Source: Guillardia theta CCMP2712 (taxonomy: Eukaryota; Protista; Cryptophyta). From it: a stretch of DNA of 64,000 nucleotides. A program made the translations under genes and the position numbers. This document shows, piece after piece, positions 33,236-39,227 of this stretch; position 1 is the first letter of the stretch, and each line of letters starts with the position of its first letter. Location of the stretch: contig NW_005434641.1 in NCBI RefSeq assembly GCF_000315625.1, positions 263,113 to 327,112 on the forward strand. The letters are read 5' to 3'. The notes below the pieces were generated by a model. It had not been told where the DNA came from. It was given only the letters and a program-made list of their open reading frames with translations, and ran no database searches.

Positions 33236-34637
33236 CGTGTTAACAACCAGTCGACACGTTGACAAGACCCAATCTGCGTGGTGAGTGAGTTTAATCGTCT
33301 TTCTGCCACCTGAGAACAACTAGCAGGCCATTATGGTGTGCTTTGACGTATACAAAGTCCAAACAGGAGGGGTGACAGTTTTTCGCCTAGCAACAGAACG
33401 TGGCAAAAGAAAAGGAACAGCATGAGCGAGGAGCGTCAGGGTAAGCGGGGAGAGTGTATTTAAGAGCCAGAAGACAACAAGGGAGGATGTAGGTACACTC
33501 GATTAGCAGCATCGCCTCTGTGCGCATCATTGTCTTACCAGCAGGCCATGGCGGCTCTTCACCCCGTTTTGTAACGCTTCAGGCATACATTGTAACCGTT
33601 TGCAGCATTCACCGGCCGCGGCCCGCCCGACTCGCGATCGGACTCGCCGCCGCGTGACTCGGACGTCGGAGGCCCACACGTGACCCGGGACGGCGTCGGT
33701 GACCGTTCCGGGACTGATCGGACTCCGAGTGACCGGGCCCGCCTCCGCGTTGGAACTAGAAGCCTCTTTCAAGCCTCAGCGGCCCGGGCCTGCGGCACTG
33801 CGGCAAGTTTACTGTCACAGTGTGACGCCCCCGGATCACAGAGTCACTCATTTCAGTTTCAAGAAGGTTTCAAGTTCCCCTTCTTCAACCTCTGTGAATG
33901 ATATCAAGTTCAATCTCACTCACACAGATCACCAGCGAACCGCAAACTGTCATCAACACTGATCTGCCACCAGTCCGGGTCATGCCACCAGTCATGCTCA
34001 TTGAATCAGAATGCCACCAGTCATTCCTGCTGATTCCCTCGATCAAGACTTAGACCAAACACTGACCATAAGGATCAAATCAGAAACCTTGCCAACTCTG
34101 ACATGGCCAGGGAAATCGAAAGTTTAGACAACCGTGGCAACCTGCAATCCTTCATCCTGTCTGCCGAGATTAGATTATCACACCGCCGATACATTCCACG
34201 ACTTCATCGACCGGACTCCCGGAATGACAAAGTCTCTCTGACCCTGGAATACAACTGACACACTACTGAGTGGACTGGATTGATTTCTTCCATTGCCGCT
34301 TTGTGCCACTGCTGCAATCTACTATACACACAGCACCTGAGACTGCTCCTCTGCCTTCTCTGAAGGTCACCAGTGTCCCAGCTCCCTAGTTTGTTCCCCT
34401 ACCGTACCCTAACCCCCCTACCCCCCGAACCTCCTTCGCACGTCCCCGTACACGCGCATGTCCCCGTACACGCCCGTTTTCCGCGTCAGTCATCCTTGTG
34501 CTTTATTCATCCCTAGTGGGTTCTTATCGTTTCCTATAATCGTTGTATTACTTTGTTTTGTCTATCTGTTCTATCCGAGCCTCGGCGTCCCAGTCGCTTC
34601 CGCCTTCAAGCTCTGACGCCGCGCTCTGCTAGTCTGC

Positions 34638-34754
34638 TCATTTGCACTTGCATCGCAGCTCTCTCGGCACGTCGCCCAGCACTGACTCGACGTGCATGCC
34701 GCAGCCGGCCCAGGAGGGCTTGTTGCACTTGGTACAGGTGACCTTTCTGCACAT
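34638..34754 (-). CDS. 38-aa Cys/His-rich microprotein, copy A (MCRKVTCTKCNKPSWAGCGMHVESVLGDVPRELRCKCK)
   Basis: CCACC-ATG context, TATA at 34886-34892, AATAAA downstream; protein-level conservation with the diverged paralog at 39063. Confidence 0.88.
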   Translation of the reverse strand: MCRKVTCTKCNKPSWAGCGMHVESVLGDVPRELRCKCK

Positions 34755-35015
34755 GGTGGTTGGTGTGGAGGTGTGAGGGTAGGTAGGTAGAGGGGCGCTT
34801 GGTAGCTCTAGAGAGAAGAGGAGGGAAGAGGGTTGCTGGTGAGATACGGAGCGGGAAGTGAAGGAGAACCGGTCGAGGAGGAGGGATATATAGACGAGGG
34901 AAGGGGAAGGTCAGGGAGAAGGGGACGGTTTTTTACTACCGCTGGTCTAGAAGGTCATCGCCAGTCAGGGGAGTTATAAATTGCGGTTGAGGGCTACATG
35001 GGTGCTATTTATAGC

Positions 35016-35129
35016 GTACATTTGTACCATGAGGAGCTTCTGTATGGGGATAGCGCTGTACCAAAATGCCGTACACATGGGTCGAGATGTACCAGCATGC
35101 CCCTGCCAGCTGGTACAGTCAAATAGTAC
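35016..35129. promoter_or_regulatory. Cluster of 7 GTAC cores in the divergent promoter of copies A/B
   Basis: GTAC at 35016, 35024, 35058, 35071, 35089, 35113, 35126. Confidence 0.7.
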
Positions 35130-35430
35130 CAGAAGACATTTTATTCCCCCGTGACGCATCGTGACCTCGAGGACGGTCAGCGACCAGTCATCGACCGGTT
35201 CTCNNNNNNNNNNNNNNNNNNNNNNNNNNNNNNNNNNNNNNNNNNNNNNNNNNNNNNNNNNNNNNNNNNNNNNNNNNNNNNNNNNNNNNNNNNNNNNNNN
35301 NNNTCACTTCCACGGATCGCGAGGCAACCCTCTTCCCTCCTCTTCTCTCTAGTACTAGGAAAAGGCCTCTCTACCTATCTACCCTCACACCACCCTTCCT
35401 CCCTACCCTCACACCTTCACACCAACCACC

Positions 35431-35547
35431 ATGTGCAGAAAGGTCACCTGTACCAAGTGCAACAAGCCCTCCTGGGCCGGCTGCGGCATGCACGTCGAGT
35501 CAGTGCTGGGCGACGTGCCGAGAGAGCTGCGATGCAAGTGCAAATGA
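35431..35547 (+). CDS. 38-aa Cys/His-rich microprotein, copy B
   Basis: Identical CDS; CCACCATG; AATAAA at 35676-35681. Confidence 0.88.
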   Translation: MCRKVTCTKCNKPSWAGCGMHVESVLGDVPRELRCKCK

Positions 35548-36240
35548 GCAGACTAGCAGAGCGCGGCGTCAGAGCTTGAAGGCGGAAGCGACTGGGACCG
35601 AGGCTCGGATAGAACAGATAGACAAGACAAAGTAATACAACGATTATAGGAAACGATAAGAACCCACTAGGGATGAATAAAACCACACAATAATGATGAA
35701 TTGAGAATGCTGTCTTTACCTACTCCACATCTACCTGATCCTCGCTTCACTAGGGATGAATAAAGCACAAGGATGATTTGCGCGGGAAGCAAGCGCTCAC
35801 GGGGACATGTCAACAAGGTGTGGAGTGCGAGAGAGGGGGCAAGATGGCTTGAGAAGCTTCAGAGGCAGAGCAAGTGAAGCTTGGTTGTCTCTGTATTTCA
35901 ATTTGAGAAGATAGAACAATGTTGAAACAAATAAGCTTGTTGAGATATGGATGCTGACGCTGCCCTAGAAATTTAGTTTAGAACTGAGAAACAAGAAGGG
36001 AGTTACGCCCATTCAAAGGCTGGATTGACGACACGAGGAGTTCTATGGATCAGGCAGATGTGGAGTAGGTAAAGACAGCATTCTCAATTCATCATTATTG
36101 TGTGGTTTTATTCATCCCTAGTGGGTTCTTATCGTTTCCTATAATCGTTGTATTACTTTGTCTTGTCTATCTGTTCTATCCGAGCCTCGGTCCCAGTCGC
36201 TTCCGCCTTCAAGCTCTGACGCCGCGCTCTGCTAGTCTGC

Positions 36241-36357
36241 TCATTTGCACTTGCATCGCAGCTCTCTCGGCACGTCGCCCAGCACTGACTCGACGTGCAT
36301 GCCGCAGCCGGCCCAGGAGGGCTTGTTGCACTTGGTACAGGTGACCTTTCTGCACAT
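36241..36357 (-). CDS. 38-aa Cys/His-rich microprotein, copy C
   Basis: Identical CDS; TATA at 36489-36495. Confidence 0.88.
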   Translation of the reverse strand: MCRKVTCTKCNKPSWAGCGMHVESVLGDVPRELRCKCK

Positions 36358-36569
36358 GGTGGTTGGTGTGAGGGTAGGTAGGAAGGTTGGTGTGAGGGTA
36401 GGTAGGTAGAGGGGCGCTTGGTAGCTCTAGAGAGAAGAGGAGGGAAGAGGGTTGCTGGTGAGATGCGGAGCGGGAAAGGGGAGGAGGGATATATAGCCGG
36501 GGGAGGGATGACTGGTCGCTGACCGTCCTCGAGGTCACGATGCGTCACGGGGGAATAAAATGTCTTCTG

Positions 36570-36683
36570 GTACTATTTGACTGTACCAGCTGGCAGGGGC
36601 ATGCTGGTACATCTCGACCCATGTGTACGGCATTTTGGTACAGCGCTATCCCCATACAGAAGCTCCTCATGGTACAAATGTAC
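36570..36683. promoter_or_regulatory. Mirror cluster of 7 GTAC cores in the divergent promoter of copies C/D
   Basis: GTAC at 36570, 36583, 36607, 36625, 36638, 36672, 36680. Confidence 0.7.
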
Positions 36684-36962
36684 GCTATAAATAGCACCCA
36701 TGTAGCCCTCAACCGCAATTTATAACTCCCCTGACTGGCGATGACCTTCTAGACCAGCGGTAGTAAAAAACCGTCCCCTTCTCCCTGACCTTCCCCTTCC
36801 CTCGTCTATATATCCCTCCTCCTCGACCGGTTCTCCTTCACTTCCACATCTCACCAGCAACCCTCTTCCCTCCTCTTCTCTCTAGAGCTACCAAGCGCCC
36901 CTCTACCTACCTACCCTCACACCAACCTTCCTACCTACCCTCACACCTTCACACCAACCACC

Positions 36963-37079
36963 ATGTGCAGAAAGGTCACCTGTACCAAGTGCAACAAGCC
37001 CTCCTGGGCCGGCTGCGGCATGCACGTCGAGTCAGTGCTGGGCGACGTGCCGAGAGAGCTGCGATGCAAGTGCAAATGA
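36963..37079 (+). CDS. 38-aa Cys/His-rich microprotein, copy D
   Basis: Identical CDS; TATATAT at 36807-36813, Inr-like TCACTT ~30 nt downstream; AATAAA at 37202-37207. Confidence 0.88.
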   Translation: MCRKVTCTKCNKPSWAGCGMHVESVLGDVPRELRCKCK

Positions 37080-39062
37080 GCAGACTAGCAGAGCGCGGCG
37101 TCAGAGCTTGAAGGCGGAAGCGACTGGGACGAGAACAGATAGACAAGACAAAGTAATACCGTTGAACGATTATAGGAAACGATAAGAACCCACTAGGGAT
37201 GAATAAAGCACAAGGATGACTGACGCGGCAAGCGAGCCTGGCATGCCATCATGTACGAAGATCTCTAGTGTCCCAACTCCCTAGCTCCTCCCCCCCCCAC
37301 CCCCTGGCTTCCCCGGCACTGCCAGACCCGCCGGGACACTGTGTGTTTCACAGTGTACTGAGGAAGCAATCAATCCAGTCCACTCAGTACTGTAGTGCTT
37401 TGTATTTTCAGGGGCAGTGAAACTCGCCAAGATCCGATCCGATCGGGTTGCGACTAGCCTCCTCATCTCCGATGATCCGACCGGGACTCGGAGCCTGAGA
37501 CAGGCTCACAGAGTCAGTCCGCCGGGCGTCCGGCCCGGCGGCCCGACACCGGGTCCGACGGCCGGTCCGATCAGTTCTGACTTCGTTCATTGACCCTCTC
37601 AGTGAACCGTTCGGAACGGTTCATCGGATACTCGGAGGCTCAGTGACTACCGTCACGGAGCCTCGGAGGGTGGGTACGGTAAAGAAGCCTTTAAGATGAG
37701 AGTCTTTTTGACTGAAGTACAGCACAGAAATGCCACACAGTAGTGACTCAGTGGCAACTTGTGAGTCACCGTGCCTGAGGCCCCCGGGCCCACAAGTTGG
37801 TTCCGATCGGTCGGTTTAGTGAACTTCGGCGGAGTCAAAGTCACCGACGGTCGGACCGTACACTGAGTGGTGGCAGTCACCCGGCCCCGGGCCGGGCGTC
37901 GGGCCGCGGCAAACAACTTAGTGACTTGCCAACGCCGGTCAACTCAGTTGGGTGTCAACTTGAGTGACTTCACTGGACTCGAGTTCGGAACGACTGCAAG
38001 GAGCGGGGATGAGGTCACCGATCATCACAGAGATTGTGAGACCCCACCCCTCCTCTCTACCACATTTACCACCCTACCCTCGTATGTCTTACACCCTACC
38101 CATCCCTATCAAGCCCTACTCCAACAGATTTCTGATCAACCACCATCGGTGGTAAAGGTAAGTCGAATGCACACCCGTAGTATTATCTACCCTCACCATA
38201 TTATTTATGGTGTTTGGTACCCACCTTTTCATATACTTGTCTTCCTCGGATGATCACCCCTACCCCCTTTTCCCTACAGTGTTGAAGTTTTTGCTTCCAC
38301 TACCCCTCCGTACCCACAATCACCATCGACCAGAGTAACCTCCACCCCACCCCTTGAATGTAAGGTTGTGCCTGGGGTGTAGAATGTAGCAGGTAAATGG
38401 GGGTTATTGCATGGCATTTGGTGGGTGGTAAGGGGGGTGGGATGGGGGATCAAGGAGGAGTTCAAAAGCAGGACACGGAGGGTGGGAGCGTGGGGATGCG
38501 ACAGTGCGAGAGGGGAGGGGAGGGGAGGGGAGGAGAGGATAGTAGAGGAGAGGAGAGGACAGGGCAGGGCAGGGCAGGACAGGGCAGGACAGGACAGGGC
38601 AGGGCAGGAGAGGACAGGAGAGTAGAGGACAGGATAGTATAGGAGGGCAGGACAGTCGCAGAAGTATGAGTAAATGGAGCACAGGTCATATGAGAGGAAC
38701 CTGTTGAAACTTTCGGATGCTGATGAGATAATAGAAGAGATTCAATGCATAAACAAAATGGATCCAGGCCTGTCTCCCCCTATTTTGGCAATACCTGATT
38801 GGGGAAGTGCTCAAGATGAGTTAATCGAAGATTTCGTGGATTGAACAGTTTCCAATGTATCAAGTGTATGCTCAAAACGAAAGAAGAAACAAGTATGTTG
38901 TATCCCTGAATGATCTCGTGGAACATAGCTGTTGAGAGCAACGAGGCTAGATGCTGACAGGAAACCAGAGTATCCAAATTAGAAATTGCTGCTCCAACTT
39001 TCGTGGTCATTCCAGACTTAATCCTGACGCTACTTGTTTCAGTTTCTTCGAAGAATCCCAAC

Positions 39063-39227
39063 ATGTGTATGAGAGTAACCTGCACGAAATGCAACAAGCC
39101 CTCCTGGGTCGGTTGCGGTCAGTGCAAGGTACAGGATACATTGACCCGCTGACGATTTTCGGCAGGAATGCACGTCGAACAGGTGTTGGGGGATGTTCCC
39201 AAGGATCAGAGGTGCAAGTGTAAATAG
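39063..39227 (+). CDS. Intron-containing paralog E of the microprotein (MCMRVTCTKCNKPSWVGCGMHVEQVLGDVPKDQRCKCK)
   Basis: Exons 39063-39117 and 39166-39227; 48-nt intron GTCAGT...GCTGAC...GGCAG; all 6 Cys plus W and H conserved, many synonymous changes. Confidence 0.88.

What the first reader, a model, noticed from the sequence alone, without database searches (positions are those of the whole stretch)
35016..36683. Seven GTAC cores in 114 bp of the bidirectional promoter driving each microprotein pair: CuRE-like regulatory module
Seen: GTAC occurs 7 times in 35016-35129 and in the mirror copy 36570-36683. About 0.45 is expected at uniform base composition. Five sites read TGGTAC(A/T) and two read CGTACA on one strand or the other; the cluster sits between the two TATA boxes. 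Established: GTAC is the core of the copper-response element bound by SBP-domain factors CRR1 (Chlamydomonas) and SPL7 (Arabidopsis). Inference: Cys-rich peptide, gene amplification and a multimerised GTAC element together look like an inducible metal-homeostasis (or hypoxia) system. This would be notable in a non-green lineage, where SBP factors are not expected and another protein would have to read the motif.
Basis: partly seen in the sequence, partly recalled or inferred. Interest (0 to 1): 0.82.

Follow-up and report, generated by a model that had tools for sequence, protein, structure and literature searches.

The report
GTAC-rich shared promoter of microprotein genes
A cryptophyte alga (very probably Guillardia theta) has a real, dense array of seven GTAC motifs in the untranscribed DNA between two back-to-back, strongly expressed microprotein genes. 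It is most likely a binding array for an unknown activator, and I found nothing that ties it to copper.

Summary
OBSERVATION: confirmed. GTAC occurs seven times in 35016-35129 and seven times in 36570-36683: TGGTACA four times, TGGTACT once, CGTACA twice. The two clusters are one 339-nt sequence present as an exact inverted duplicate, so they count as one observation.

NOT CHANCE OR TANDEM REPEAT: no tandem repeat underlies the cluster, and 0 of 20,000 dinucleotide shuffles reach seven.

PROMOTER POSITION: stranded RNA reads show about zero depth over the cluster and heavy divergent transcription on both sides.

ASSEMBLY GAP: the gap at 35204-35303 lies 75 nt outside the cluster, in the proximal promoter of copy B. 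No record bridges it.

COPPER READING: unsupported.
- A six-frame search of the whole genome finds no SBP and no Copper-fist domain, while AP2 is found (positive control).
- Transcripts are abundant in ordinary RNA runs.
- The two intron-containing paralogs lack the array.
- 80 relatives of the microprotein, mostly bacterial, have no GTAC cluster upstream.
- The other dense TGGTAC clusters in this genome sit mostly in transposon-like repeats, one of them with at least 21 copies.

BEST READING: an upstream activating array read by an unidentified factor that is not an SBP protein.

EARLIER NOTES: the scan had already noted GTAC tracts in other pieces of this genome.

The parts
35016..35129 (.). 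GTAC array, copy 1: seven sites (TGGTACA x4, TGGTACT x1, CGTACA x2). Four GTACCA sites in one orientation are spaced 34, 31 and 37 nt apart.
   Evidence: no tandem repeat; RNA depth 0
36570..36683 (.). GTAC array, copy 2: the exact reverse complement of copy 1.
   Evidence: DNA contigs of runs X1 and X3 cover it without differences; RNA depth at most 0.4
34854..35192 (.). Shared promoter segment P of gene pair A/B: the 339-nt arm that is 100% identical to its mirror copy.
   Evidence: unique in the genome apart from its mirror copy
36507..36845 (.). Shared promoter segment P of gene pair C/D, the mirror copy.
   Evidence: In run X3 its DNA depth is about 1.7 times that of the single-copy centre, so two real copies exist.
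34638..34754 (-). Microprotein gene A: 38 codons plus stop, no intron.
   Evidence: minus-sense RNA reads
35431..35547 (+). Microprotein gene B. Its own 5' leader (35304-35401) has almost no reads.
36241..36357 (-). Microprotein gene C.
36963..37079 (+). Microprotein gene D. Its 5' leader begins within 36796-36899.
34886..34892 (-). TATA-type box of gene A.
   Evidence: transcripts start downstream of it
36489..36495 (-). TATA-type box of gene C. DNA run X3 shows a variant here.
36807..36813 (+). TATA-type box of gene D.
35204..35303 (.). Assembly gap in the proximal promoter of gene B. It lies outside the array and is not bridged.
35003..35014 (.). Near-palindrome GCTAT-TT-ATAGC abutting the array (mirror copy at about 36685-36696). 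It is not used as a TATA box, because no RNA starts behind it.
39063..39227 (+). Fifth paralog with a 48-nt GT..AG intron (39118-39165, phase 1). There is no GTAC in the roughly 750 nt upstream.

Best explanation
WHAT IT IS. The 114-bp array is a cluster of seven sites of one short word: TGGTAC(A/T) five times and CGTACA twice. It lies in the untranscribed spacer of about 310 bp between the TATA boxes of two divergently transcribed, intronless copies of a 38-residue Cys/His microprotein gene.

HOW IT MOST LIKELY WORKS. I read it as an upstream activating array. Several molecules of one sequence-specific protein bind side by side and drive strong transcription outward in both directions. That protein is not yet identified and is not an SBP-domain protein. 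The strong transcription appears constitutive.

HOW IT AROSE. The array came with the new promoter of a retrocopied or intron-less gene copy. It was then doubled twice by inverted duplication, giving the present four-gene palindrome.

SHOWN: the motif excess; the absence of a tandem-repeat origin; the position between TATA boxes; the lack of transcription over the array; strong divergent transcription beside it; two real DNA copies; no SBP domain in the genome.

INFERRED: that a protein binds the sites; that binding activates transcription; that expression is constitutive rather than metal-regulated.
For: - Seven GTAC in 114 bp, five of them in the hexamer TGGTAC. That hexamer makes up only 18 of 215 GTAC sites in 89 kb of unselected sequence from this genome.
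- 0 of 20,000 dinucleotide shuffles reach seven, and there is no tandem unit.
- Stranded RNA reads (run X21) give zero depth over 34924-35339 and at most 0.4 over 36484-36795.
- Depth reaches about 2,000 over the genes and their untranslated regions.
- The reads lie on the strand expected for each gene, and a poly(A) end is seen at about 35700.
- 11,685 of 19.8 million records lie on the 3.1-kb locus.
- Probable RNA assemblies from four further studies hold the transcripts.
- The two intron-containing paralogs have other upstream regions, so the array goes with the amplified, intronless copies.
- The same hexamer forms dense clusters elsewhere in the genome. These include a 2.8-kb repeat with at least 21 copies and the DNA upstream of a subtilase open reading frame (ORF). 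This suggests a real reader for the word in this organism.
Against: - There are no binding or reporter data.
- This is one sequence, not two, so nothing is replicated.
- No other cryptophyte genome was at hand, so conservation between species is untested.
- Exact transcription starts were not resolved; only 104-nt depth bins are available.
- Most reads fit more than one copy, so the expression of each copy is uncertain.
- The culture conditions of the RNA runs are unknown, so 'constitutive' is an inference.
- Most other dense clusters lie in mobile-element-like repeats. The word could therefore belong to a transposon protein rather than to a host activator.
Confidence: 0.55

Rival explanations
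1. One reading: the array is a copper-response-like element. A copper-, metal- or oxygen-sensing factor reads the GTAC cores and induces the amplified Cys-rich peptide genes as part of metal homeostasis.
For: - Multimerised GTAC cores are typical of SBP targets. The Arabidopsis FSD1 promoter peak holds eight GTAC cores, and SBP domains recognise a GTAC core (PMC9516184, read; Kropat et al. 2005, title seen).
- Two of the seven sites are CGTACA.
- The peptide has six invariant Cys and one invariant His, and the gene is amplified.
Against: - No SBP and no Copper-fist domain in a six-frame search of the genome. AP2 and Ctr are found by the same method.
- SBP was also absent from the haptophytes, stramenopiles and red alga surveyed in PMC4827209.
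- Five of the seven sites are TGGTAC.
- Transcripts are abundant in ordinary RNA runs.
- The paralogs and 80 relatives lack the array.
- The bacterial neighbours of the family are not metal genes.
- The other clusters I could inspect lie in transposon-like repeats or beside a subtilase ORF.
Confidence: 0.07
2. The array is mobile-element material: a set of binding sites for a transposon protein (subterminal repeats), or a transposon's own promoter. It came to lie beside the retrocopied gene and may or may not matter for the gene's expression.
For: - The densest other GTACCA clusters are transposon-like.
- One is a 2.8-kb repeat with at least 21 copies at 95-100% identity. Its cluster lies 155-255 nt from one end, and four more GTAC lie near the other end.
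- Another lies in a repeat seen at four places, beside an ORF with a DDE_Tnp_4 transposase domain of the Harbinger/PIF type.
- The four genes have no intron, as expected of a retrocopy.
Against: - The promoter segment has no DNA similarity to anything else in the genome.
- The locus is a local palindrome, not a dispersed family.
- The array sits exactly between working TATA boxes of strongly expressed genes.
Confidence: 0.15
3. The array has no function. It is a chance or mutation-driven pile-up of a short palindromic word, carried along by the duplication.
For: - It is one sequence, not two.
- A scan of a whole genome offers many chances.
- Three-site GTAC clusters are no commoner genome-wide than a reversed control pattern (683 against 805).
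Against: The Poisson expectation for the whole genome is about 0.1 for seven GTAC and about 2e-4 for five TGGTAC. No shuffle reaches seven. The position between TATA boxes of highly expressed genes is not a random place.
Confidence: 0.1

Closest known systems
Copper-response elements (CuRE) read by the SBP-domain factors CRR1 (Chlamydomonas) and SPL7 (Arabidopsis)
   Same: Several GTAC cores are packed into a short promoter stretch upstream of the transcription start. Two sites have the CGTACA form. The FSD1 promoter peak holds eight GTAC cores (PMC9516184).
   Different: The genome has no SBP domain. The dominant word is TGGTAC. There is no sign of copper control. The target is an uncharacterised microprotein, not a copper-economy gene.
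Clusters of one repeated binding site in shared divergent promoters, such as the yeast GAL1-GAL10 upstream activating sequence or divergent histone gene pairs (from my own knowledge)
   Same: An untranscribed spacer of a few hundred bp lies between two divergent TATA-driven genes and carries repeated copies of one short word. The likely mechanism is the same.
   Different: Both the word and its reader are unknown here. The two genes are identical copies made by inverted duplication, not two different co-regulated genes.
Subterminal repeat arrays of DNA transposons, which bind the transposase or an accessory protein
   Same: In this genome the same GTACCA hexamer is clustered near the ends of a 2.8-kb repeat with at least 21 copies, and inside a Harbinger-like element.
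   Different: The promoter segment shares no longer similarity with those elements and is unique in the genome. It works, or at least sits, as a gene promoter.
GTAC-core motif of the apicomplexan AP2 factor AP2-G (from my own knowledge)
   Same: It is a factor outside the SBP family whose preferred site has a GTAC core. AP2 domains exist in this genome (three hits).
   Different: Nothing links any of the three AP2 genes to this array. They are named only as candidates to test.

Membership tests
CuRE / SBP copper-response module | Multiple GTAC cores in the promoter of the regulated gene | tested here: met
   Seven GTAC in 114 bp between the TATA boxes
CuRE / SBP copper-response module | An SBP-domain factor (PF03110) encoded in the genome | tested here: not met
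   The six-frame profile search of all 87 Mb gave no candidate. The same method finds AP2 and Ctr. A domain split by introns could still escape.
CuRE / SBP copper-response module | Transcription induced by copper deficiency, hypoxia or nickel | not testable with these tools
   The conditions of the RNA runs are unknown. The high read depth in an ordinary run, and presence in probable RNA runs of four more studies, argue against a normally silent gene.
CuRE / SBP copper-response module | The same element in front of copper-economy genes (Ctr, Cu-ATPases, cytochrome c6) | tested here: inconclusive
The clusters I could inspect lie in repeats, beside a subtilase ORF and beside ORFs without a Pfam family.
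Shared divergent promoter with a repeated binding-site array | Two divergent transcription units with an untranscribed spacer under 1 kb | tested here: met
   Start codons are 606 nt (C/D) apart. RNA depth is about zero in the spacer, and the reads on both sides lie on the expected strands.
Shared divergent promoter with a repeated binding-site array | One short word over-represented without a tandem-repeat origin | tested here: met
Shared divergent promoter with a repeated binding-site array | A sequence-specific protein binds the word, and the word is needed for expression | not testable with these tools
   This needs EMSA or pull-down and reporter or editing experiments.
Shared divergent promoter with a repeated binding-site array | The array is kept in related promoters | tested here: not met
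   Paralog 5 has no GTAC in the roughly 750 nt upstream. Paralog 6 has six GTAC in about 310 nt, but of the GGGTAC / GTACCCC kind. The 80 metagenome relatives have at most 3 GTAC in their 300 nt upstream. True orthologues from other cryptophytes were not available.
Transposon-derived sequence | DNA similarity to a dispersed repeat family | tested here: not met
   BLAST of 34924-35203 against the whole genome finds only the two local copies.

The most novel reading that the evidence does not exclude
Cryptophytes have a DNA-binding protein outside the SBP family that reads TGGTAC(A). The same reader serves a young transposon family and has been recruited, or its sites have, to drive one of the most strongly expressed small genes of the cell. 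That would make this array the first defined cis-element and enhancer of a cryptophyte nucleus.
Probability: 0.15. Interest if true: 0.55.

Novelty: new member of a known kind. Interest (0 to 1): 0.3.

Why it matters
Almost nothing is known about nuclear promoters in cryptophytes. This is a compact spacer of about 310 bp that drives two strongly expressed genes outward and is built around one repeated 6-7-bp word. It gives a concrete probe for finding the first sequence-specific activator in this lineage. It is also a candidate strong promoter for transgene work. The copper story, which gave the finding its high first score, has no support, so the finding should not be passed on as a metal-response system.

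Tried and rejected
MICROPROTEIN SEARCHES
- Pfam scans of the microprotein and ten longer relatives found no family for the domain.
- The word-index protein search was blank. This means little for a 38-residue query; the exhaustive search then found 642 representatives.
- A profile search of solved structures and a Foldseek search of the confident model gave no significant match.
A 5-row alignment worked.

GENOME-WIDE PATTERN SEARCHES
- All were limited to two variable gaps.
- Three-site GTAC clusters are no commoner than a reversed control.
- WGTACCA and SGTACAA triples are dominated by satellites and dispersed repeats, so their counts say little.

SAMPLING AND FETCHING
- One contig look-up failed for technical reasons. 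Two others gave short metagenome contigs of no use.

GENERAL PROMOTER MARK
- I tested crudely whether GTAC is a general mark of non-coding DNA here, an idea from other readers' notes. Density is 2.26 per kb inside long ORFs and 2.52 outside. This shows no difference, but the ORF mask is too permissive to settle it.

PAPERS
- Searches for cryptophyte promoter motifs or copper transcriptomics of Guillardia found nothing relevant. GTAC hits were swamped by the opsin name GtACR.

CONSIDERED AND REJECTED
- A tandem-repeat origin of the array.
- An assembly artefact as the source of the second copy: DNA depth of the promoter segment is about 1.7 times that of the single-copy centre.
- A transcribed small RNA in the spacer: RNA depth is zero.

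Full report
THE LOCUS AND THE GENOME

The window is contig C33:263113-327112 of an 87.1-Mb assembly in 669 contigs. Earlier notes of this scan call the genome a cryptophyte, very probably Guillardia theta. The size fits what I remember of that genome, but I could not confirm the name from a paper.

Four identical, intronless genes for a 38-residue protein lie here:
- gene A at 34638-34754 (-)
- gene B at 35431-35547 (+)
- gene C at 36241-36357 (-)
- gene D at 36963-37079 (+)

They form two divergent pairs, A/B and C/D. The whole stretch from about 34255 to 37400 is one palindrome around a unique centre of about 305 nt (35742-36046).

A fifth paralog lies at 39063-39227. A sixth lies at C33:108203-108533. 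Both have an intron at the same place and in the same phase, inside the codon of Gly19. I translated their exons separately and did not join them. The amplified copies therefore look like a retrocopy, or an intron-loss copy, that gained its own promoter and was then doubled twice by inverted duplication.

CHECK OF THE OBSERVATION

GTAC occurs seven times in 35016-35129 and seven times in 36570-36683. The sites are TGGTACA four times, TGGTACT once and CGTACA twice.

The two arrays are one sequence. 34854-35192 and 36507-36845 are complementary at 339 of 339 positions.

The excess is real:
- The window's own GTAC density gives 0.29 expected sites.
- None of 20,000 dinucleotide-preserving shuffles of the 339-nt arm reaches seven.
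- There is no tandem repeat unit under the array.
- A Poisson model was built on 89 kb of unselected sequence from this genome. It expects about 0.1 clusters of seven GTAC and about 2e-4 clusters of five TGGTAC in the whole genome.

TATA-type boxes lie at 34886-34892, 36489-36495 and 36807-36813.

THE GAP

The gap at 35204-35303 lies 75 nt to the right of the last GTAC, in the proximal promoter of gene B. It is non-coding, so frame does not matter.
- Left of the gap, the B side follows the C side and then switches to letters that in copies A and D follow the TATA box.
- The letters on the two sides of the gap are only 2 nt apart in copy D at 36825.
- In the known letters copy B therefore has no TATA box.
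- No read or contig bridges the gap.
- 35304-35339 has no depth in any of the four runs laid.
- The B side of pair 1 is therefore uncertain. The array itself is not affected.

TRANSCRIPTION

I laid one stranded RNA run of raw reads (X21), two runs that hold the locus as DNA or unknown material (X1, X3) and one probable RNA assembly (X6) on 34300-37400.

In run X21:
- Depth over 34924-35339 is 0, and over 36484-36795 it is at most 0.4.
- Depth over the genes and their untranslated regions reaches about 2,000.
- First mates lie on + for the + genes and on - for the - genes.
- 185 reads carry a poly(A) run after about 35700, 24 nt behind an AATAAA at 35676.
- 11,685 of 19.8 million records read lie on this 3.1-kb stretch.
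- 10,228 of them fit two places, so depth cannot be assigned to single copies.

Leader sequences of the A/D type and 3' ends of the B/C type are both well covered. The leader of D begins inside 36796-36899, just after its TATA box.

Nine further runs from four studies, guessed to be RNA, hold 27-51% of the sampled words.

The array is thus untranscribed DNA between two active, divergent promoters.

DNA contigs of X1 (36436-36876) and X3 (36436-36845) reproduce the array exactly. In X3 the depth of the promoter segment is about 1.7 times that of the single-copy centre, so the duplication is real.

TEST OF THE COPPER READING

GTAC is the core recognised by SBP-domain factors, and real SPL7 targets carry many cores (PMC9516184; reference list of PMC5570362). 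The resemblance in form is fair. The rest of the reading does not hold up:
- A six-frame profile search of the whole assembly finds no SBP domain and no Copper-fist domain.
- The same method finds three AP2 domains and the one Ctr transporter, so it can detect small domains in this intron-rich genome.
- A published survey found no SBP genes in haptophytes, stramenopiles or a red alga (PMC4827209).
- Five of the seven sites carry TGGTAC, not CGTAC.
- The genes are strongly expressed in ordinary RNA data.
- Paralog 5 has no GTAC in the roughly 750 nt upstream of it. Paralog 6 has six GTAC in about 310 nt, but of a different kind, GGGTAC or GTACCCC.

THE PEPTIDE

The peptide does not look like a metal buffer.
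- It belongs to a large uncharacterised family: 642 representatives at E of 0.001 or better. One member is a protein named hypothetical in the fungus Dispira parvispora.
- Positions C2, C7, C10, C18, H21, C35 and C37 are invariant or nearly so.
- The predicted fold is confident (pLDDT 90.7).
- It matches no Pfam family and has no significant solved relative.
- A metagenome scan found 501 confirmed loci. The 80 kept are mostly 63-75% G+C.
- Those I checked had bacterial neighbours: MMPL, a PASTA kinase, AcrB and topoisomerase I.
- None of those neighbours is a metal gene.
- None of the 80 loci has more than three GTAC in the 300 nt upstream.

OTHER CLUSTERS IN THE GENOME

Pattern searches for three WGTACCA or three SGTACAA words return mostly satellites and dispersed repeats. 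I fetched eight such places with 10 kb of context each.
- Four belong to one repeat family. Near-full-length copies share about 2.8 kb. Its GTAC-rich stretch is found at 21 or more places at 95-100% identity. Six or seven GTAC, mostly GTACCA, lie 155-255 nt from one end, and four more lie near the other end.
- One lies in a repeat seen at four places, next to an ORF with a DDE_Tnp_4 transposase domain.
- One, itself partly a tandem duplication, lies upstream of a 2,217-residue subtilase ORF.
- One, with six GTAC, has a second copy in the genome. Another, with five, lies upstream of a short ORF with no Pfam family.

In about 220 kb of unselected sequence there was one cluster of five and one of eight, the latter a 50-bp tandem repeat.

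These clusters mix TGGTACA(A) with CGTACA(A), as the promoter array does. The promoter segment itself matches nothing else in the genome.

So the word seems to have a reader in this organism.

VERDICT

The array is most likely an upstream activating array of a shared divergent promoter, read by an unknown factor that is not an SBP protein (confidence 0.55). Rivals:
- transposon-derived sites (0.15)
- no function (0.10)
- a copper- or metal-responsive element (0.07)

It is a new member of a known kind of promoter design in a lineage whose promoters are uncharted, and its interest is modest.

Other first-stage notes had already pointed to GTAC-rich tracts and TACCCC/GGGGTA words near gene starts in other parts of this genome. 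My crude test did not show a general GTAC excess outside long ORFs, so that idea stays open.

Noticed in passing
window 34638-37079; loci L059-L138: The 38-residue microprotein family is not only eukaryotic. A metagenome scan confirmed 501 loci. The 80 kept are mostly 63-75% G+C. Those checked had bacterial neighbours (MMPL, PASTA kinase, AcrB, topoisomerase I). Identity to the algal protein is 63-78%, which raises the question of gene transfer.
   Followed up: partly
window 39063-39227 and L052 8203-8533 (minus strand): Paralogs 5 and 6 share a phase-1 intron in the Gly19 codon (48 nt and about 230 nt). The four amplified copies have none, which suggests a retrocopy or an intron loss before amplification.
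   Followed up: partly
L046 6240-9023 (G000:C108): A dispersed repeat whose near-full-length copies share about 2.8 kb. It has no long ORF. Its GTAC-rich stretch is found at 21 or more places at 95-100% identity. Its ends share a short GCGTTGTCG word in inverted orientation. A subterminal cluster of six or seven GTAC (mostly GTACCA) marks it as probably a young non-autonomous DNA transposon.
   Followed up: partly
L051 4363-6922 (G000:C13): A transposon-like unit seen at four or more places. It has a DDE_Tnp_4 (Harbinger/PIF-type) transposase ORF, a second ORF of 369 residues on the other strand, and five GTAC at that ORF's upstream end.
   Followed up: partly
window 35646 and 36141: RNA reads (480 reads) and an RNA contig carry a 6-nt insertion in the 3' untranslated region that none of the four assembled copies has. 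Summed DNA contig depth over the coding sequence is also well above four times the single-copy centre. Either the strains differ or some gene copies are not in the assembly, possibly in the gap.
   Followed up: no
window 35304-35339: The letters just right of the assembly gap have no depth in any of four runs (RNA or DNA). They may be a poor read end rather than true sequence.
   Followed up: partly
window 36457: An RNA contig of run X6 (depth about 400) covers gene C from its 3' end to 36457. It then continues for 29 letters unlike the assembly, at the 5' end of the transcript. This could be another copy's leader, a chimeric contig, or an added leader.
   Followed up: no
window 36471-36497: DNA run X3 shows five substitutions and one deletion packed into 27 nt around the C-side TATA box. 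They turn the TATATA box into a TATAAAAAA-type box, while the adjacent 339-nt promoter segment is identical.
   Followed up: no
window 34732, 35450, 36335, 36982: Each amplified copy has one more TGGTACA (on the antisense strand) inside codons 6-8, made by the codon pair TGT ACC. Paralogs 5 and 6 use other codons and lack it. This is probably chance.
   Followed up: no
window, whole: GTAC occurs 165 times against 74 expected from dinucleotide shuffles, but about 245 would be expected from base composition alone. The word is thus rarer than base composition predicts and commoner than its dinucleotides predict. Repeats in 1-10 kb of the window add recurring sites.
   Followed up: no
window 37400-37900: A GC-rich stretch full of CCGG and short palindromes, followed by GTAC words, lies right beside the palindrome. 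It resembles the intergenic GC islands that other notes of this scan describe at gene starts.
   Followed up: no
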